A stretch of 64,000 nt of DNA from Octopus sinensis (Eukaryota), in contig NC_043009.1 of assembly GCF_006345805.1 (NCBI RefSeq), positions 63,860,001 through 63,924,000 on the forward strand, given 5' to 3'. Shown in pieces: positions 610-60,699 of the stretch. The notes beneath the pieces were generated by a model. It was not told the DNA's origin. It worked only from the letters and a program-made list of their open reading frames with translations, and ran no database searches. The number at the start of each line of letters is the position of its first letter. The stretch's first letter is position 1. A program made the translations under genes and the position numbers.

Positions 610-925
610 CATCATCATCATCATCATCATCGTTTAGCGTCCGTTTTCCATGCTAGCATGGGTTGGACGGTTTAACTGGGGTCTGTGAAGCCAGAAGGCT
701 TCATCAGGCCCAGTCAAATCTGGCAGTGTTTCTACGGCTGGATGCCCTTCCTAACGCCAACCACTCCGTGAGTGTAGTGGGTGCTTTTTATGTGCCACCC
801 GCACAGGTGCCAGACAGAGCTGGCAAACAGCCACGAACGGATGGTGCTTTTTATGTGCCACCGGCACGAGGGCCAGGCAAGGCTGGCAACGGACACGAAC
901 GGATGGTGCTTTTTACGTGCCATGC

Positions 926-4336: not shown

Positions 4337-4426
<90 letters not shown>
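4275..4426. repeat. (TA)n microsatellite
   Basis: Direct reading. Confidence 0.95.
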
Positions 4427-4429
<3 letters not shown>

Positions 4430-5060
4430 CTGGTGGTACGTAAAAAGCACTATCCGACTCGGGGCCGTGGCACGTAAAATACTCCAATGCGACCATACGA
4501 CAGGCACCCATGCCAACCCCCTTTGCTTGTGAAGACATGTTGGGGCAAGCGAAATCGAAATCGAATTGAACCAGCCAGGATCCCTGGTCTGGTGGTACGT
4601 AAAAAGCACTATCCGACTCGTGGCCGTGGCACGTAAAATACTCCAATGCGACCGTACGACAGGCACCCTTGCCAACCCCCTTTGCTCGTGAAGACATGTT
4701 GGGGCAAGCGAAATCGAAATCGAATTGAACCAGCCAGGATCCCTGGTCTGGTGGTACGTAAAAAGCACTATCCGACTCGTGGCCGATGCCAGCACCGCCT
4801 CGACTGGCTTCCGTGCCGGTGGCACATAAAATACACCAATCTGACCGTGGCCGTTGCCAGCCCCGCCTGGCACCTGTGCAGGTGGCACGTAAAAAGCACC
4901 CACTACACTCACGGAGTGGTTGGCGTTAGGAAGGGCATCCAGCTGTAGAAACATTGCCAAATTAGACTGGAGCCTGGTGCAGCCTTCTGGCTTCCCAGAA
5001 CCCCGGTCGAACCGTCCAACCATGCTAGCATGGAGAACGGACGTTAAACGACGATGATGA
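4427..5060 (+). mobile_element. RTE 3' UTR fragment with 159-bp internal tandem duplication
   Basis: TGGTGGTACGTAAAAAGCACTATCCGACTCG starts at 4431, 4590 and 4749; ends GGACGTTAAACGACGATGATG. Confidence 0.85.
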
Positions 5061-5170: not shown

Positions 5171-5535
5171 CATCATCATCGTCGTTTAATGTCCGCTTTC
5201 CATGCTGGCATGGGTTGGATGGTTTGTCTGAGGCATGGTGAACCAGAGGCTGCACCAGGCTCCAATCTGATCTGGCAACGTTTCTACAGCTGAACGCCCT
5301 TCCTAACGCCAACCACTTCGAGAGTGTAGTGGGTGCTTTTACATGCCACCAGCACGAGGTCCAGTCAGGCGGTTCTGGCAACGACCATGCTCAAAAGGTG
5401 TTTTTTACGTGCCACCTCCACAGGAGCCAGTCTGGCGGCACTGGCAACGACCATGCTTAAACGTTGTTTTTCCTGTGCCACCAGTATATGTGCCGGCAAG
5501 ACGACGCTGGCAACGATCACACTCGAATGGTGATC
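5170..5535 (-). mobile_element. RTE 3' UTR fragment, tail-to-tail with previous copy
   Basis: (CAT)n GTTTAATGTCCGCTTTCCATGCTGGCATGGGTTGG... Confidence 0.85.
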
Positions 5536-7664: not shown

Positions 7665-8210
7665 TCATCATCATCATCATTGTCATCGTCGTCATCATCG
7701 TTTAATGTCCGCTTTCCATGCTGGCATGGGTTGGATGGTTTGACTGAGGACTGGCAAGCTAGGAGGCTGCACCAGGCTCCAGTTTGATCTACAGCTGGAT
7801 GCCCTTCCTAATGCCAACCACTCTGAGAGTGTAGTGGGTGCTTTTTACATGCCACCAGCATGAGAGCCAGTCAGGCAGCACTGGCAACGATAACACTTGA
7901 ATGGTGCTTTTTATGTGCCACCAGCATGGAACCAGTCAGGTGGCACTGGCATTGACCATGCTCGAGTGATGCTTTTTAAGTGCCACCAGCACAGGTGCCA
8001 ATCAGGCATTACTGTCATCAGTCATGACAATGACTTCCCTTGACTCAACAGGTCTTCACAAATGCAGTTTATTTCCCAATGATTGAAGGGTGCTCTTAAA
8101 TGGGCCGGTTATGCTGCGCTGGCATAGGCTACGGTTACGGCCTCACTTGCCTTGCCAGGTCTTCTCAAGCACAGCATATCTCCAAAGGTCATGCTTCACC
8201 ACCTCGTGTA
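7665..8210 (-). mobile_element. 5'-truncated RTE LINE (ORF C-terminus + 3' UTR)
   Basis: Minus strand GAGGTGGTGAAGCATGACC..TGGAGATATGCTGTGCTTGAGAAGACC (EVVKHD/WRYAVLEKT) followed by the UTR and (GAT)n tail. Confidence 0.8.
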
Positions 8211-14400: not shown

Positions 14401-15719
14401 ATATAGTAGTATAATATAAACAAAAAATATAAAGAATTGAATGGAAACATCTATACAGACTACTAGGACTTCATGATGTGTATAGTATTGGTATCTTTTA
14501 AACACTAATTCTAATGCAAGGAGACCAATTCCAGTAAATTCACATACATAGATAAATCAGATAAAGCCAGGATGTAAGACATCTCTGGAAAGAGCAATCA
14601 CTTTCTTTACAAAACCTCATAGATATATATATATGGTGGGATGATGATGTGAGGAGGAGGATAGATGTATGCATGTATTTACGCACATATGCATTCAAGT
14701 ATACTTTAAGCCCTAGAATTTCTGTAAGTGTAAATGCATGACAATGCCGGCCAACTCTCTTAAGACTTCCTCAAGTATACTTCTGTGAATTCAAATGTTT
14801 ATTTTGTCAATGAACGCCATTAAATAAATGTTAGTTTTACTTTACAGTTTTAAAAAGTAAGACACAACGACATAGTGAAGCTGCTTTGTATTCCTCTCGG
14901 AAACCCAGTCTAGTATTCTAATATAACATTCTGATATTGACTTAGTAATATCAAATGACTACAGTGTTGCTCAAAGGTGAGATGGAAACTAACAAATTAC
15001 ACCAAATAAGACTTTGAACTAAAAATGTTATGTGTCACAATTGTGGCTGCGTTGGTGCCATGGGGAGCTGGTAAATGGAGACGTATTTTGTTGGTTGTGT
15101 GAATCATAACTGAAGCATGCTCGCAAACATTGAACTGAAATATTTATTGCTGAACATAAAAATATTGAGTGTTGGCTATTTATAATGAACAACATAAATA
15201 TTTGTCGACTGGGAAAGAAACAAACAGCTCTGAAATTATAGAAAGTTGTCCGTGTGGCAATGTGGTTGGCCCAAAAATATACCAAGTCAAACACACAAAT
15301 GGCAACAGAGGTCTTTGTAATGGATAAAAGAGTCGAGTCCTTGCAATATTATATTTTCAAATGAGCCATTAGCCAGTCTATTTACAAAGGGGTCAGTCAG
15401 ATTATTTAGAAGGCATTTTCAGTTCTCCACAAGTATTCCACAGTTTTAGAAAGATGAAATTTCCTCAGTGGATAAAGTGTTTAAAGGTCTCTTTGGTTTG
15501 CATTACTGTGTGAGCACTTGATGCTATGTTGTCTAAGAAAGAGTAACGAACAGTAATTTTATACACATTGAAATTTTTTATGTACGTCTGCTGAGAAAGT
15601 GTTCTCTAAATAGAGACAAAATGGTTCTGATTTTCCTGGAAGCCTCCCAGCTGATCGGAGAGTTGACCCACGAAATATTCCTTGGCTGTCTGCCCTTGGC
15701 CACCAAACCTTGGCTGTCA

Positions 15720-15879
15720 AGCCATCGACTCCAGTGTTTCACTGGTACTCATTTTAGCAATCCCAAAAGGATGAAAGGCAAAGTCGACCTCAGTGGAATT
15801 TAAACACAGAACATAGCGAGAGGCAAAATACCACAAAGCATTTCGTCCAGCGTGCTAATGGCTCTGCCAGCTTGCCACC

Positions 15880-15911
<32 letters not shown>

Positions 15912-16470
15912 CATTTAACATCCGTTTTCCATGCTGGCATGGGTTGGATGGTTTGACTGAGGTCTGGAGAGCCAGCGGCTGCACCAGGCTCCAATCTGAT
16001 CTGGCAATGTTTCTACAGCTGGGTGCCCAATAATAATAATGCTTTCTACTAAAGGCACAAGGCCTGAAATTTCGTAAGAGGGGGACTAGTCTATTACATC
16101 GACCCCCAGCGTTTCACTGGTACTTATTTTATCAAACCCAAAAGGATGAAAGGAAAAGTCGACCTTGGTGGAATTTGAACTCAGAATGTAAAGAAATGCC
16201 ATTAAGCATTTCGCCTACCATGCTAACGATTCTGCCAGCTCCACTGCCTCATATAGTAATAATATTAATAATAATGCTTTCTATTATAGGCATGAGGCCT
16301 GACATTTTAGGGAAGGAGTTAGTCAATTACATTGACCCCCAGTACATTGAGCCCGAAAGGATGAAAGGCAAATCTGACTTGGCAGGATTGGAACTCAGAA
16401 CATAAAAACAGACAAAATGCTGCTAAGCATTTTGCCCATCATGCTAACGATTCTGCTAGTTCACTGCCTT
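15720..16470 (-). mobile_element. Cluster of three SINE-D copies with a short RTE tail fragment (15905-16030)
   Basis: Three GGATGAAAGG(C/A)AA..GACC..GG..TT..AAC.CAGAA blocks and heads CTGCCAGCT; two carry the alternative tail GCACAAGGCCTGAAATTT. Confidence 0.8.
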
Positions 16471-20049: not shown

Positions 20050-20225
20050 ATATATAGGTATGTATTCATCTGTCTTTACATTCTGAGTTCAATTCCACCA
20101 AGGTTGACTTTGCCTTTCATCCTCTTGGGGTCGATAAAATAAGTAACAGTTGCATACTAGGGTCGATCTAATCGACTGTTCCCCTCCCCCAAAATTTCGG
20201 GCCTCGTGCCTGGAGTAGTAATGAA
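20050..20225 (+). mobile_element. 5'-truncated SINE-D with alternative (D2) tail
   Basis: TTCTGAGTTCAATTCC...CTTTGCCTTTCATCCTCTTGGGGTCGATAAAATAAGTA...GGCCTCGTGCCTGGAGTAG. Confidence 0.8.
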
Positions 20226-23434: not shown

Positions 23435-23825
23435 TCTTTTCTATCCTAGGCACAGTCAATTAGTAGGGGGCCAGTCAATTAGATCGACCCCAGTATGCAA
23501 CTGGTTCTTAATTTATCAACCCTGAAAGGATGAAAGGCAAAGTTGACCTTGGCAGAATTTGAACTCAGGACATAAAGACAGACTAAATGCCTATTTCTTT
23601 ACTACTCACAAGGGGCTACACACAGAGGGAACAAACAAGGACAGACAAACGGATTGAGTCGATTATATCGACCCCTGTGCGTAACTGGTACTTAATTTAT
23701 CGGCCCCGAAAGGATGAAAGGCAAAGTTGACCTCGGCGGAATTTGAACTCAGAACATAATGGCAGATGAAATACCGCTAAGCATTTCGCCCGGCGTGCTA
23801 ACGTTTCTGCCAGCTCACTGCCTCC
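23435..23825 (-). mobile_element. SINE-D dimer (D1 unit followed by D2-tailed unit)
   Basis: Junction at 23590/23591 (CTAAATGC|CTATTTCTTTACT). Confidence 0.85.
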
Positions 23826-24057
23826 TTCACAGTTATTATTGTTTCAGAAATAATTTATAGAGAAACATTTTTAGTGACTGTTCCATGTTCTTTGTATACA
23901 GGAAACCATACTACATGATGCTGCAGAGACACAGAAGATTGGTTTTTGTTTTGTGTGTTTGTTTTTAATAATAATTTGGACTGGTGGAAGTGTCGGTCCT
24001 CTTTGCCTTTGCAAAATGCAGCAGAGATTGATTGAAGCCAACATGGTTAATGTTCTT

Positions 24058-30860: not shown

Positions 30861-30949
30861 ACTCCTTGTCCAGTTTCCTCCTCAAGCCATTCCCACCACT
30901 AATGATTTTTCTAATTTCGCTGCCCTAATTAAATGTGGGCAAAATTCTT

Positions 30950-31358
30950 ATTTGGTTATTGCCCTCAAGGGGCTAAACATAGAGGGGACAAACAAGGACA
31001 GACAAAGGGATTAAGTCGATTACATCGACCCCAGAGCATAACTGGTACTTAATTTATCGACCCCAAAAGAATGAAAGCAAAGTCGACATCGGCGAAATTT
31101 GAACTCAGAACATAACAGCAGATGAAATACCTATTTCTTTACTGCCCACAAGGGGCTAAACACAGAAGGGACAAACAAGGACAGACAAACGGAATAAGTC
31201 GATTATATTGACCCCAGTGTGCAACTGGTACTTAATTTATCGACCCCGAAAGGATGAAAGGCAAAGTTGACCTCGGCGGAATTTGAACTCAGAACGTAAT
31301 GGCAGATGAAATAACGCTAAGCATTTCATCCGACATGCTAACGTTTCTACCAGCTTGC
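30950..31358 (-). mobile_element. SINE-D dimer
   Basis: Junction GATGAAATAC|CTATTTCTTTACT at 31130/31131. Confidence 0.9.
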
Positions 31359-31469
31359 CGGCTTCTATATGAGCAGAATTCTGCATTGGAGCATTATACA
31401 TCCCTCCTGACCCATCAGATCCTGCCAAGCTGTCCAATTCATGCCAGCAGGGAAGATGGACATTAAAAG

Positions 31470-34085: not shown

Positions 34086-34698
34086 GATTGAATAGTACCA
34101 CCTAAGTTGTTATATGCAGTGTGCATGATAGCAATGACAGTGGTGGTGGTGGTGGTTGTGGTGTTGGTGGCAATGGTAGTGGTGGTGCTGGTGGTGGTGC
34201 TGGTGGTAGTGGTGGTTAAGATTGATGGTAGCCATTACAACTTGTGATGTTGTTCTTACTGTTTGTGGTTACTATTGAGTATGATCAACTCTAATCAAGC
34301 AAACTGACAACAAATCTCTCTCTCTCTCTCTCTGACCCTCTCTCTCTCTCTCTCTCTCTTTCACACATTACACACACATATATGTATAGACATATACATA
34401 TACATGCATGTATGCATGCATACATACACACATACATACACACACAGACAGGATGTTCTAAAAATGTATACACACTTTAACAGCTGATAACTTCCTTAAT
34501 TTTCCATTTCTTTTCTGAATTAACCAATTAGAAATAATGAACAGTGACAGACTAAGTCTTGTGCAAAGGAAATCTAATCTAAAGTCTTACTGGAAATTTT
34601 AAATCCCAACTTATCATCAAATTAGAAGTAAGTTTGAAGCAGTTTGAACTGTTCCAAATGTCCACAGGAAACTTTCTAGAAGACCACAGAAATCAACA

Positions 34699-35467
34699 GG
34701 CGGCGAGCTGGCAGAATCGTTAGCACGCCGGGCGAAATGCTTAGTGGTATTTCATTTGTTATTACGTTCTGAGTTCAAATTCCACCAAGGTCGACTTTGC
34801 CTTTCATCCTTTCGGGGTCGAATAAATAAGTACCAGTTATGCACTGGGGTCGATATAATCGATTTAATCCGTTTGTCTGTCCTTGTTTGTCCTCTCTGTG
34901 TTTAGCCCCTTGTGGGCAGTAAAGAAATAGGTATTTCGTCTGCCGTTACGTTCTGAGTTCAAATTCTGCTGAGGTCAACTTTGCCTTTCATCCTTTCGGG
35001 GTTGATAAATTAAGTACCAGTTACGCACTGGGGTCGATATAATCTATTTAATCAGTTTGTCTATCCTTGTGTGTTCTCTCTGTGTTTAGCCCCTTGTGGG
35101 TAGTAAAGAAATAGGTATTTTGTCTGCCGTTACATTCTGAGTTCAAATTCTGCTGAGGTCGACTTTGCCTTTCATCCTTTCGGGGTCGATAAATTAAGTA
35201 CCAGTTACACACTGGGGTCGATATAATCAACTTAATCCGTTTGTCCTCTCTGTGTTTAGCCCCTTGTAGGTAGTAAAGAAATAGGTATTTCGTCTGCCCC
35301 TACGTTCTGAGTTGAAATTCCGCTGAGGTCAACTTCGCATTTCATCCTTTCGGGGTCGATTAAATAAGTACCAGTTACGCACTGGTGTCGATATAATCGA
35401 CTTAATCCGTTTGTCTGTCTTTGTTTGTCCCCTCTGTGTGTAGCCCCTTGTGGGCAGTAAAGAAATA
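34699..35467 (+). mobile_element. SINE-D tetramer flanked by an 11-bp TSD
   Basis: One head plus headless units starting 34931, 35115 and 35285; TSD AGAAATCAACA at 34688-34698 and 35468-35478. Confidence 0.9.
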
Positions 35468-35708
35468 AGAAATCAACAAGCTTCACAAAACCAGAAAGGA
35501 TACCAGAAACATATTGCCAGAGTTGAAAGAAATCTGTGTGGCAAACGAAACAACATAAGATGGGAATTTCAAAATCAAGCATCCATTTGCATTTTAAAGT
35601 ACAATAATCCGTCGACTATCGCAGGTGTTACGCTCCAAAACCTCCCACAGAAATAATTGAAATCTGAAAAAATATAAATACCTATCAGCCGCAGAAACCT
35701 GGATATAC

Positions 35709-35935
35709 GGCGAGCTGGCAGAAACGTTAGCATGCTGGGCGAAATGCTTAGCGGTATTTCGTCAGCCGTTACGTTCTGAGTTCAAATTCTGCCGAGGTCG
35801 ACTCTGCCTTTCATCCTTTTGGGGTCGATAAATTAAGTACCAATTACGCACTGGGGTCGATGTGATTGACTTAATCCCTTTGTCTGTCCTTGTTTGTCCC
35901 CTCTATGACTAGCCCCTTGTGGGCAATAAAAAATA
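35709..35935 (+). mobile_element. SINE-D monomer with 16-bp TSD
   Basis: TSD AGAAACCTGGATATAC at 35693-35708 and 35936-35951; Deu/Nin-like CCTTTCATCCTTTTGGGGTCGATAAATTAAGTACC. Confidence 0.9.
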
Positions 35936-36074
35936 AGAAACCTGGATATACTGAGGAGTCTCCGATATAAATTTAGAGATATTAGCCAGAAAAATCCGCG
36001 ATGTACTGAGTGTGCGATAAGTGAACTGTGATGTAGTGAGTACGCGATAGAGGAACTGTGATATGACGAGGGAT

Positions 36075-38449: not shown

Positions 38450-38760
38450 CATCATTTAGCGTCCGCTTTCCATGCTAGCATGGGTTGGATGGTTCGACTG
38501 AGGACTGGCAAACCAGATGGCTGCACCAGGCTCCAATCTGATCTGGCAGTGTTTCTACAGTTGGATGCTCTTTCTAACGCCAACCAATCCATGAGTGTAG
38601 TGGGTGCCTTTTATGAGCCACCGGCACAGAAGCCAGAGGAGGCTGGCAATGGCCACGATTGATTGGTGCTTTTTATGTGCCACTGGCACGGAAGCCAGTC
38701 AAGGCGGAGCTGACATCGGCCACGTTCGGATGGTGCTTTTTACATGCCACTGACACAGGG
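38450..38760 (-). mobile_element. RTE 3' UTR fragment
   Basis: TTTAGCGTCCGCTTTCCATGCTAGCATGGG... Confidence 0.85.
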
Positions 38761-56184: not shown

Positions 56185-56479
56185 CAACTTAATTTACATC
56201 CACCTCCCTCCCTCCCCCTCTCGTCCTTCTTATATTACCATAGGCGTCCTTCCTCTTCCACCACCACCACCCCCACACACATACATGCACTGCTCCAAAA
56301 ATTGCTGTTGTGTTTGTGGGAGTGTGTGGGCGGGAGGGAGGGAGGGAGGGGAGGTCATTTATGCTGACTCACTTCAGACAAAGGGGGTGGGGGATATCTG
56401 AGACAGTGCCATCGAATGCACCATTGCTCCATTGGCGGCAATGGTGGCAGTGGCAGGAGTGGTGGTGGTGGTGGTGATG

Positions 56480-56486
56480 ATGGTGA

Positions 56487-56519
<33 letters not shown>

Positions 56520-56523
56520 TGTT

Positions 56524-56579
<56 letters not shown>

Positions 56580-56757
56580 TGTCATCACCATCATCATTGT
56601 CATCATCATCATCATTATCATCATCCTCATCATCGTCATTGTCATCATCATCATCATCATCATCATCAGCGTCATCATCATCATTGTCATCACCATCATC
56701 ATCGTCATTATCATCATCGTCATCATCATCATTATCATCATCATCATCATTGTTGTC
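56480..56757. repeat. (CAT)n array
   Basis: Direct reading. Confidence 0.95.
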
Positions 56758-56769
56758 ATATGTTTCTTA

Positions 56770-57000
56770 TTTCTTTATTGCCCACAAGGGGCTAAACGTA
56801 GAGGAGGAAAAACAAGGACAGACAAATGGATTAAGTCGATTACATCGACCCCAGTGCATGACTGGTACTTAGTTTATCAACCCCAAAAGGATGAAAAGCA
56901 AAGTCGACCTCTGCGAAATTTGAACTCAGAACATAGCGGCAGATGAAATACAGCTAAGCATTTTGCCCGGCATGCTAACGATTCTGCCAGCTCCCTGCCT
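56770..57000 (-). mobile_element. SINE-D monomer (D1 tail)
   Basis: TTTCTTTATTGCCCACAAGGGGCTAAAC...CTGCCAGCTCCCTGCC. Confidence 0.85.
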
Positions 57001-59000: not shown

Positions 59001-59249
59001 AGGTGGTGAGCTGGCAGAAACGTTAGCATGCCAGAAATGTAAGCACGCCAGGTGTAATGCTTAGCAGTATTTCGTCTGTCGTTACGTTCTGAGTTCAAAT
59101 TCCGCCGAGGTCAACTTTGCCTTTCATCCCTTCAGGGTCGATAAATAAAGTATCAGTTTCGCACTGGGATTAATGTAATCGACTTAATCCCTTTGTCTGT
59201 CCTTGTTTGTCCCTTCTGTGTTTAGCCCCTTGTGGGCAATAAAGAAATA
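59001..59249 (+). mobile_element. SINE-D monomer with 21-bp TSD
   Basis: TSD TATATTATCCTTTGAACTTGT at 58980-59000 and 59250-59270. Confidence 0.9.
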
Positions 59250-60200: not shown

Positions 60201-60227
60201 AGGTTTATAGCAAATGGTTTCCTAAAA

Positions 60228-60455
60228 GTGGCGAGCTGGCAGAAACGTTAGCACGCCGGGCGAAATGCTAGCGGTATTTCGTCTGTGTTACGTTGTGAGT
60301 TCAAATTCCGCCGAGGTCGACTTTGCATTTCATCCTTTCGGGGTCGATAAATTAAGTACCAGTTACGCACTGGGGTCGATGTAATTGACTTAATACCTAT
60401 GTCTGTCCTTGTTTGTCCGCTCTGTGTTTAGCCCCTTGTGGGTAATAAAGAAATA
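60228..60455 (+). mobile_element. SINE-D monomer with 12-bp TSD
   Basis: TSD GGTTTCCTAAAA at 60216-60227 and 60456-60467. Confidence 0.9.
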
Positions 60456-60699
60456 GGTTTCCTAAAATTTGAGATTTTTGTAAAAAGACATTTCAAAAAG
60501 AATGGCTAAAAATCCACAATGATATTAAATAAATTTACAGCTGATTTTATTTTAAATGCCATGGAATGGCCTGATTGCCTCAACACTGGTTACTCTGACC
60601 AGCTTCACAGGGTTTTTTAATTTTCAAATTAATGGTGGCATCGAGAATGCATTTAGCCACTGTGAACAATTCACTTGTGTATATATAAATCTTTTATGT

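What the first reader, a model, noticed from the sequence alone, without database searches (positions are those of the whole stretch)
34688..35478. SINE concatemers with one fixed junction, a single TSD and an AATAAA-to-AGTAAA switch
Seen: one SINE-D head followed by three headless units of 170-184 bp. A single 11-bp TSD (AGAAATCAACA) flanks the whole array, so it inserted as one event. The same junction (GAAATAG|GTATTTC) recurs, essentially identically, at two other loci (23590/1, 31130/1). All five internal units end ...AGTAAAGAAATAG, while the four D1 monomers (35925, 56775, 59238, 60444) end AATAAA. The junction is itself a hairpin (GAAATA-GG-TATTTC), i.e. the unit's two ends are complementary. 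Inference: either a multimeric master lineage whose internal units lost the poly(A)-like signal, or reiterative/rolling-circle reverse transcription of a circularised or end-paired SINE RNA. I do not know of this mode being described for a Deu/Nin-domain SINE.
Basis: partly seen in the sequence, partly recalled or inferred. Interest (0 to 1): 0.78.

Follow-up and report, generated by a model that had tools for sequence, protein, structure and literature searches.

The report
Octopus SINE arrays with headless units
A short mobile element in an octopus genome was inserted three times in this window as a chain (one complete copy followed by one to three copies lacking the promoter half), always joined at the same nucleotide; similar chains are already known from a clam and from reptiles, so this is a tidy example, not a new kind of thing.

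Summary
At 34699-35467 one complete SINE unit is followed by three headless units (184, 170 and 184 bp), flanked by a perfect 11-bp target-site duplication. The same junction (GAAATA|GGTATTTC) joins two further dimers at 31131/31130 and 23591/23590, each with its own duplication.

The AGTAAA state is not an internal-versus-terminal switch. It is one of three substitutions marking a sub-lineage I call D-a, and the terminal unit of the tetramer carries it too. Every unit upstream of a junction is D-a. The downstream units belong to three sub-families (D-a, D-b, X-type).

The headless units start exactly at the first base of the 3' arm of a conserved 13-bp hairpin in the head. Two free-standing truncated copies start at the same base.

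My preferred reading is this. The junction arose by a reverse-transcriptase template switch at that break. It is now carried by a multimeric D-a lineage, with mixed ends made by strand transfer and one later local duplication (T2/T3). Rolling-circle copying is not supported.

Equivalent arrays are published for blood-clam SINEs and for squamate SINE-derived satellites. Only 221 kb of octopus DNA could be examined, so inheritance versus repeated formation of the junction is unresolved.

The parts
34688..34698 (+). 5' target-site duplication AGAAATCAACA of the tetramer
   Evidence: identical to 35468-35478
34699..34929 (+). T1: complete D-a unit (head with A-box-like and B-box-like motifs, body, tail AGTAAAGAAATA)
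34729..34758 (+). Head hairpin within T1: 5' arm 34729-34741, loop 34742-34745, 3' arm 34746-34758. The 3' arm GGTATTTC... is where headless units begin.
   Evidence: consensus fold; 86% of cells paired over 29 copies, 6 pairs with changes on both sides
34930..35113 (+). T2: headless D-a unit (starts GGTATTTC, keeps the B-box-like motif, lacks the A-box-like motif)
35114..35283 (+). T3: headless D-a unit with a private 14-bp deletion and a TTTT at its start. It is the closest relative of T2.
35284..35467 (+). T4: terminal headless D-a unit. Its tail AGTAAAGAAATA abuts the TSD directly.
35468..35478 (+). 3' target-site duplication of the tetramer
30949..31363 (-). Dimer A: A1 (complete D-a, 31363..31132) plus A2 (headless, D-b diagnostics, tail AATAACCAAATA, 31131..30949). 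TSDs at 31382..31367 and 30948..30933 match 13/16.
23436..23824 (-). Dimer B: B1 (complete D-a, 23824..23592) plus B2 (headless X-type SINE with X-type tail, 23591..23436). TSD AATAATAACTGTGAAG at 23840..23825 and 23435..23420 matches 16/16.
35709..35936 (+). D-b monomer (tail AATAAAAAATAA). TSD GAAACCTGGATATAC at 35694-35708 and 35937-35951.
56768..56999 (-). D-b monomer (tail AATAAAGAAATA)
59002..59249 (+). D-b monomer with a short duplication inside the head
60228..60455 (+). D-b monomer. TSD GGTTTCCTAAAA at 60216-60227 and 60456-60467.
20057..20225 (+). Free-standing headless X-type copy that starts at the same GG as the array junction. It has its own short A/T-rich TSD (AATATATA / AATATGTA).

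Best explanation
These are retrotransposed chains of a tRNA-like, B-box-bearing octopus SINE. Each chain entered the genome in one target-primed reverse transcription event.

The joint was created when the LINE reverse transcriptase reached a discrete break at the top of the 13-bp head hairpin. That break is either the 5' end of a headless template or a strong stop. The enzyme then carried on at the 3' tail of a second SINE RNA. The resulting dimer kept the promoter-bearing first unit and no TTTT between units, so it could be transcribed as a whole. It founded a multimeric sub-lineage, D-a, marked by GATATAAT, CCGTTTG and AGTAAAGAAATA, and most junctions seen today are inherited from it.

Arrays whose last unit is D-b or X-type arise when a cDNA started on another SINE RNA transfers at or near the same break onto an internal unit of a D-a multimer RNA. 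Unit number changes further by local duplication or conversion, as in T2/T3.

Shown: single TSDs, the fixed joint, the sub-lineage markers, the heterotypic ends, the position of the joint relative to the hairpin, and the free-standing copies with the same 5' end. Inferred: the template switch, transcription as a multimer, and strand transfer.
For: 1. One TSD per array: 11/11, 16/16 and 13/16.

2. The identical junction occurs at 3 loci, 5 times against 0.04 expected.

3. All 6 AG-type tails belong to units that also carry two other fixed diagnostics. In 221 kb of octopus DNA there are no D-a monomers, compared with 6 D-b-like monomers, and 5 of 6 AG tails but 0 of 8 AA tails are followed by a unit.

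4. B2 shows the X-type diagnostic TGTCTTTATG within 12-17 nt of the joint and has an X-type tail. A2 carries all three D-b diagnostics.

5. Headless units begin at the first base of the 3' arm of the strongest predicted head hairpin. The hairpin is kept in 29 copies: 86% of cells paired against 34-67% when the partner is slid, and 6 pairs changed on both sides, reached by 2/500 shuffles.

6. Two free-standing copies start at the same base, out of about 9 clear 5' truncations: window 20057 and L114 24574.

7. The consensus unit has no TTTT.

8. T2 and T3 differ at 4/146 non-CpG sites, against 7-15 for other D-a pairs.

9. [quoted passage not shown]
Against: The sample is three arrays in one 64-kb window, and no further D-a array was found in 157 kb of other octopus DNA.

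The sites that separate unit 1 from the later units are all CpG sites, and about 40% of CpGs have decayed per copy. Parallel mutation therefore cannot be excluded.

Two of three arrays are heterotypic, which demands frequent strand transfer.

T4 shows that the AG tail can itself prime insertion. D-a monomers should therefore exist if reverse transcriptase also starts at internal tails, and none was seen.

No RNA data exist for a multimeric transcript or for a headless RNA.

The head is not recognised as a tRNA by ARAGORN or Rfam.
Confidence: 0.5

Rival explanations
1. Every junction is made anew. Headless SINE RNAs, cut in the loop of the head hairpin, are copied to their 5' end, and the reverse transcriptase then hops end-to-end onto the 3' tail of a monomeric D-a RNA. 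The D-a tail is favoured because it base-pairs with the new 5' end (GGCAG/CUGCC plus GAAAUA/UAUUUC).
For: The downstream units come from three sub-families, and B2 is X-type almost from the joint. Free-standing copies have the same 5' end. The joint sits at the loop/3'-arm boundary. The D-a-specific G adds a G-C pair: duplex energy is -13.1 kcal/mol against -9.4 for the D-b tail. In other samples D-like units also sit upstream of head-truncated units, again with an X-type last unit.
Against: No D-a monomer was found in 221 kb, although monomers should far outnumber by-product arrays. All five joints are identical with no extra or missing bases. The pairing advantage is weak: 4.3% of shuffled tails do as well, and in cis the D-a and D-b joints fold almost equally (-10.9 against -10.6). 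Internal tails in L120 are AATAAA-type. An RNA transcribed from a D-a head in an array would not end at the D-a tail.
Confidence: 0.27
2. Successive independent insertions. 5'-truncated SINE copies landed one after another exactly at the end of the tail of a resident D-a copy, because the endonuclease and priming step favour tail-like A-rich targets.
For: Insertion next to resident tails does happen in these genomes. Full-length X copies lie head-to-tail with short spacers, their own TSDs and different ages, at window 15716-16468 and L118 66042-66626. Many TSDs start AGAA-, resembling the tail.
Against: All 5 downstream units are headless at the same base, whereas about 31 of 51 copies in the census are full length. 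No inner TSDs or spacers are present. The outer TSD brackets the whole array. The tails of A2 and B2 are not copies of the resident tail, which rules out a hidden tail-as-TSD.
Confidence: 0.08
3. Rolling-circle or reiterative reverse transcription of one circularised or end-paired headless RNA.
For: The unit ends are complementary. T2-T4 share a TG at one CpG site that is not seen in the other 8 units.
Against: A and B are heterotypic. T1 shares CpA states with A1 and B1 that T2-T4 lack. The distances among T2, T3 and T4 are unequal (4, 15 and 11 differences), although copies of one template should be equidistant. No circular RNA evidence is available.
Confidence: 0.07
4. Purely local post-insertion tandem duplication (unequal crossing-over or slippage) of part of a monomer, independently at each locus.
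For: T2 and T3 are closer to each other than any other pair. This mechanism is proposed for squamate SINE-derived satellites and for clam arrays (PMC10702118, PMC11481361).
Against: The same breakpoint, to the base, occurs at three loci. The second units of A and B are different sub-families from the first. T1 and T4 are no closer to T2/T3 than A1 and B1 are.
Confidence: 0.05

Closest known systems
TSD1-(SINE)n-TSD1 arrays of HCD SINEs in the blood clam Scapharca broughtonii (PMC11481361, Fig. 5E text)
   Same: It is a mollusc tRNA-related SINE. The first unit has a complete head, the later units are all truncated at the same head position, the last unit has a complete tail, and one TSD surrounds the whole array. 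Arrays mixing different SINE families are also reported there.
   Different: In the clam the first and internal units are also truncated in the 3' tail. Here every unit keeps the full tail. No link to a hairpin, a sub-lineage marker or repeated insertion of the same joint was reported there, and the clam arrays reach 4-15 units.
SINE-derived satellites (sSat) of squamate reptiles (PMC10702118)
   Same: These are tandem repeats made of part of a SINE, with a longer terminal unit that extends to the SINE terminus. Many loci per genome share one unit structure. The unit length of about 170-184 bp falls within the 150-180 bp class they discuss.
   Different: sSats can reach about 1000 units, are enriched near chromosome ends and are homogenised. 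The octopus arrays have 2-4 units, are about 10% diverged, are flanked by TSDs and behave as retrotransposed copies.
Dimeric SINEs that amplify as a unit (Alu and other dimeric SINEs, as summarised in PMC10702118)
   Same: Only the first unit carries the full internal promoter. The same junction is found at independent loci, each with its own TSD.
   Different: Unit number (2 or 4) and the identity of the last unit are not constant. The units are the same SINE minus 47 nt, not two distinct monomers.
End-to-end template jumping of non-LTR and group II intron reverse transcriptases (abstract of bioRxiv 10.1101/792986; R2 and L1 chimeras from my own knowledge)
   Same: It joins the complete 3' end of one RNA to the 5' end of another within a single insertion, and needs no homology.
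   Different: It was not demonstrated here. Known chimeras usually show variable joints, whereas this joint is invariant.

Membership tests
SINE (short, non-autonomous, LINE-dependent retroposon) | Short element in many dispersed copies, each flanked by its own target-site duplication | tested here: met
   About 51 copies reaching the core in 221 kb. TSDs of 11-16 bp around monomers and arrays.
SINE (short, non-autonomous, LINE-dependent retroposon) | Head derived from a tRNA, with an internal Pol III promoter (A and B boxes) | tested here: inconclusive
   A-box-like TGGCAGAAACG and B-box-like GAGTTCAAATTCC are seen by eye. ARAGORN finds no tRNA, and Rfam gives no tRNA hit even at E<=10 on a 97%-consensus copy.
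SINE (short, non-autonomous, LINE-dependent retroposon) | 3' tail shared with a partner LINE | not tested
   No LINE with this tail was identified. A tail-only match at L119 5199 was not followed up.
Multimeric SINE amplifying as a unit | Same inter-unit junction at independent loci, each array within one TSD | tested here: met
   Three loci and five joints, against 0.04 expected by chance.
Multimeric SINE amplifying as a unit | Constant composition, with position-specific substitutions shared between loci | tested here: inconclusive
   First units share three diagnostics plus two CpA states. Last units are of three sub-families and unit number is 2 or 4. The informative sites are CpGs with 40% decay.
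Multimeric SINE amplifying as a unit | Transcription of the whole multimer from the first unit | not testable with these tools
   The only support is the absence of TTTT in the consensus unit.
SINE-derived satellite (squamate sSat type) | Tandem copies of part of a SINE, with a longer terminal unit reaching the SINE end | tested here: met
   Head-bearing T1, A1 and B1, followed by units spanning position 48 to the tail.
SINE-derived satellite (squamate sSat type) | Long homogenised arrays, enriched near chromosome ends | tested here: not met
   2-4 units that are 6-12% diverged from each other. Chromosomal position is unknown.
Blood-clam type TSD1-(SINE)n-TSD1 | Complete head only in the first unit, the same head truncation in all later units, and a single outer TSD | tested here: met
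Blood-clam type TSD1-(SINE)n-TSD1 | First and internal units truncated in the 3' tail | tested here: not met
   All internal tails are complete, reading ...AGTAAAGAAATA.
Deu / Nin-DC SINE superfamily | Central domain homologous to the Deu/Nin-DC consensus | not tested
O. vulgaris is reported to hold tRNA-Deu SINE families (PMC13282606).
Rolling-circle reverse-transcription product | All units copied from one template, hence the same sub-family and equidistant | tested here: not met
   A and B are heterotypic, and distances within T are unequal.

The most novel reading that the evidence does not exclude
SINE RNAs of this family are cut in the anticodon-like loop of the head hairpin, as tRNAs are cut into halves. 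The tail of the D-a lineage has evolved to pair with the freed 5' end, with the A-to-G change adding a base pair. The reverse transcriptase is thereby handed from one RNA to the next, or round an end-paired RNA. On this reading concatemer formation is a built-in, sequence-encoded property of the element and a direct RNA-level route from SINEs to satellite-like arrays.
Probability: 0.12. Interest if true: 0.7.

Novelty: new member of a known kind. Interest (0 to 1): 0.36.

Why it matters
How dispersed SINEs turn into dimeric SINEs and into tandem, satellite-like arrays is still explained mostly by appeal to unequal recombination.

These octopus arrays give a concrete case to work with. The joint is invariant and coincides with a defined RNA structure. 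It recurs at independent insertions and links units of different sub-families. That makes an RNA-level origin (template switching at a fixed break) testable with a genome-wide census and with RNA 5'-end data.

For annotation, such arrays inflate SINE counts. They also generate spurious open reading frames, some of which are already deposited as 'uncharacterized proteins' of Octopus.

Tried and rejected
1. I scanned public collections for the junction 18/19-mer. The metagenome scan gave 103 stretches, the viral scan 10 and the bacterial/archaeal genome scan 9. All were chance matches with no SINE around them.

2. I used protein searches to reach more octopus DNA. An 83-aa antisense SINE translation found one O. 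bimaculoides protein. A 1285-aa six-frame chimera was a poor idea, because the candidate list saturated and only one hit came back. Searching with that aminopeptidase returned no other octopus protein. Isoform X2 and the UniRef entry were not on record.

3. The routes that worked were cluster members and the exhaustive representative search. They gave L114, L118 and L119 (157 kb non-N) plus short Logan contigs. No further D-a arrays were found there.

4. tRNA identity of the head: ARAGORN and Rfam found nothing.

5. RNAalifold on decayed copies did not recover the hairpin unaided. It had to be tested explicitly.

6. The species of Logan runs SRR11869384 and SRR11869390 could not be identified.

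7. I considered and rejected a new D-a copy inserting into the head loop of a resident SINE, because no resident head lies upstream of T1, A1 or B1. I also rejected A-to-I editing as the source of AGTAAA, because the lineage also differs by a transversion and by a change in the opposite direction.

Full report
WHAT IS THERE

The window is octopus DNA. Translations of its SINE copies match only Octopus 'uncharacterized proteins'. The same SINE families, at 90-97% identity to consensus sequences built from the window, occur in loci fetched from the O. bimaculoides and O. sinensis chromosomes.

At 34699-35467 there is one complete SINE unit, T1 (231 bp), followed by three units that lack the first 47 nt. 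These are T2 (184 bp), T3 (170 bp, with a private 14-bp deletion) and T4 (184 bp). A perfect 11-bp direct repeat, AGAAATCAACA, brackets the whole array.

The same joint...AGTAAAGAAATA|GGTATTTC..., links two dimers on the minus strand. Dimer A is 31363..30949, with a 16-bp TSD matching 13/16. Dimer B is 23824..23436, with a 16-bp TSD matching 16/16. The junction 19-mer occurs five times, against 0.04 expected by chance.

Aligning all units shows that the A/G difference in the tail is one of three fixed differences that split the D-type units into two sub-lineages.

- D-a carries GATATAAT, AATCCGTTTG and AGTAAAGAAATA. Its members are T1-T4, A1 and B1.
- D-b carries GATGTAAT, AATCCCTTTG and AATAAAGAAATA. 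Its members are the four monomers and A2.

T4 ends the tetramer and abuts the TSD, and it too has AGTAAA. The G is therefore a lineage marker, not a mark of being internal.

The second unit of dimer A is D-b. The second unit of dimer B is a different SINE family (X-type), with an unrelated tail (...GGCCCCCT...TGTGCCTAGGATAGAAAAG). It shows the X-type diagnostic TGTCTTTATG within 12-17 nt of the joint.

The pattern is therefore as follows. The unit upstream of a joint is always D-a (5 of 5). The unit downstream may be D-a, D-b or X, and it always starts at the same base.

In 221 kb of octopus DNA I found no D-a monomer and six D-b-like monomers. Five of 6 AG tails are followed by a unit, compared with 0 of 8 AA tails.

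WHERE THE JOINT LIES

Folding the consensus RNA gives a 13-bp hairpin in the head: CGGGCGAAAUGCU, loop UAGC, GGUAUUUCGUCUG. The headless units begin exactly with the first base of the 3' arm.

I tested the hairpin on 29 head-bearing copies from several sub-families. 86% of cells are paired, against 34-67% when the 3' partners are slid. Six pairs show changes on both sides, a value reached by only 2 of 500 shuffles. The structure was derived from the consensus of these same sequences, which favours it somewhat.

Two free-standing copies start at the same base. One is an X-type copy at window 20057 with its own TSD. The other is a copy in L114 fused head-to-head to an inverted SINE 3' part. That is two of about nine clear 5' truncations in the census. 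By my own rough calculation the probability is about 0.01 if truncation points were uniform.

The D-a-specific G adds a G-C pair, giving a duplex energy of -13.1 kcal/mol against -9.4 for a D-b tail. This is only suggestive. 4.3% of shuffled tails do as well, and in cis the two joints fold about equally.

HISTORY OF THE UNITS

About 40% of CpG dinucleotides have decayed per copy, so these are old insertions and CpG sites are unreliable.

At non-CpG sites T2 and T3 differ by 4/146, whereas other D-a pairs differ by 7-15. This points to one later local duplication or conversion inside the tetramer. T1 and T4 are no closer to T2/T3 than A1 and B1 are.

T1, A1 and B1 share a CpA at one site that none of the other eight units has. 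T2-T4 share a TpG at another site. Both patterns are suggestive only (about 0.03 after allowing for 12 sites). If real, they mean that the first unit and the later units of the tetramer did not come from one template.

MECHANISM

Purely local duplication cannot explain an identical breakpoint at three loci, or the heterotypic dimers.

Successive insertions next to a resident tail do occur in these genomes. Full-length X copies sit head-to-tail with spacers, their own TSDs and different ages at window 15716-16468 and L118 66042-66626. Those have heads and spacers. The D-a arrays have neither, and the tails of A2 and B2 are not copies of the preceding tail.

Rolling-circle copying of one RNA is contradicted by the heterotypic dimers and by the unequal distances within T.

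Two readings remain.

(a) The joint arose once by a template switch at the hairpin-top break and is inherited in a multimeric D-a lineage. That lineage is transcribed from the first unit, and the consensus unit has no TTTT. Heterotypic ends arise by strand transfer of cDNAs begun on other SINE RNAs.

(b) Every joint is made anew, by end-to-end jumping from headless RNAs onto D-a tails.

The absence of D-a monomers and the base-perfect identity of the five joints favour (a). The heterotypic ends, with B2 being X-type almost from the joint, and the free-standing headless copies favour a recurrent break, which both readings need. I put (a) at about 0.5 and (b) at about 0.27. The data in hand cannot separate them.

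OTHER SAMPLES

Short Logan contigs from runs of unknown species carry related but much more diverged units (65-73% identity).

- L116 is a dimer whose joint lies within a few bases of the octopus one. Its internal tail reads ..GGTAGAAAA.. and its terminal tail is AATAAAGAAATA.
- L120 has at least five D-like units joined at head positions of about 11-22, with AATAAA-type internal tails and an X-type last unit.

Head-truncated chains of D-like units are therefore not confined to this window. Other junction classes exist, and the AG state is not required for a tail to sit in front of a unit.

COMPARISON WITH WHAT IS KNOWN

The architecture is published. In the blood clam, HCD SINEs form TSD1-(SINE)n-TSD1 arrays with a complete head only in the first unit, the same head truncation in later units, and a complete tail in the last. 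Arrays mixing families are also reported there (PMC11481361).

Squamates have many loci of tandem repeats made from part of a SINE, with a longer terminal unit. The same paper notes that true SINE multimers and dimeric SINEs are known (PMC10702118).

What is particular here is fourfold. The tail is complete at every joint. The joint coincides with the loop/3'-arm boundary of a conserved hairpin. There is a sub-lineage marker. The same joint is seen at independent insertions with different last units.

I found no description of such arrays in the octopus repeat literature I could search. I therefore file it as a new member of a known kind, of moderate interest.

LIMITS

Everything rests on three arrays in one window plus 157 kb of additional octopus DNA. 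The tRNA origin of the head could not be confirmed. The Deu/Nin assignment and the partner LINE were not tested. No RNA data were available.

Noticed in passing
window 780-922, 5337-5483, 7839-7991, 38603-38758 (also 4426-4785): A second interspersed repeat family carries the same tandem sub-repeat of about 63-67 bp (GGTGCTTTTTATGTGCCACC...GCTGGCAAC...) in 2.2-2.4 copies at four or more loci. This is another element in this genome that propagates with an internal tandem duplication.
   Followed up: partly
window 15716-16468 (-); L118 66042-66626 (-): Three full-length X-type SINEs lie head-to-tail with short A/T spacers, their own TSDs and very different ages (72% to 97% identity to consensus). 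This shows repeated insertion next to resident tails. Many X copies sit in (TAA)n/(ATT)n tracts, hinting at a microsatellite-targeting partner LINE.
   Followed up: partly
L114 24468-24640 (-): Two SINE 3' parts are joined head-to-head, one of them inverted. The direct one starts at GGTATTTC, the same base as the array joint. The arrangement looks like a two-ended or twin-priming event.
   Followed up: partly
window 59002-59050: The D-b monomer at 59002-59249 has a duplication of about 22 nt inside its head (GCTGGCAGAAACGTTAGCATGCCAGAAATGTAAGCACGCC).
   Followed up: no
L118 40785-40810: A 10-N gap with the same sequence repeated on both sides lies inside a D-b monomer in the O. bimaculoides chromosome assembly. 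This is an assembly artefact that mimics a head-plus-headless structure.
   Followed up: yes
P0001/P0122 (XP_052826731/30), P0124, P0128 (XP_036367557); window 56416-56946: Deposited 'uncharacterized proteins' of O. bimaculoides and O. sinensis consist largely of antisense translations of these SINEs (...STPVRNWYLIYRPRKDERQSRPRWNLNSE...). They are probably exonised or mis-annotated repeats.
   Followed up: partly
L120 819-1985 (-), L116 887-1223 (-), L115 497-710 (-): Logan contigs from unidentified runs (SRR11869384, SRR11869390) hold diverged D-like SINEs. L120 is a chain of at least 5 units with joints at head positions of about 11-22 and tail-only fragments between units. L116 is a dimer joined near position 50. 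L115 is a monomer whose tail is followed by TTTTGTCTG, which resembles the start of a headless unit.
   Followed up: partly
L119 5199-5222: A D-type tail (CCCTGTGTGGCTAATAAAGAAACA) occurs without a SINE body upstream and is followed by (TATC)n. It may be the 3' end of the partner LINE or of another family sharing the tail.
   Followed up: no
window 35114-35121: T3 starts GGTATTTTG. The C-to-T change creates a TTTT, a potential Pol III terminator, inside the array. No other unit and not the consensus has one.
   Followed up: no
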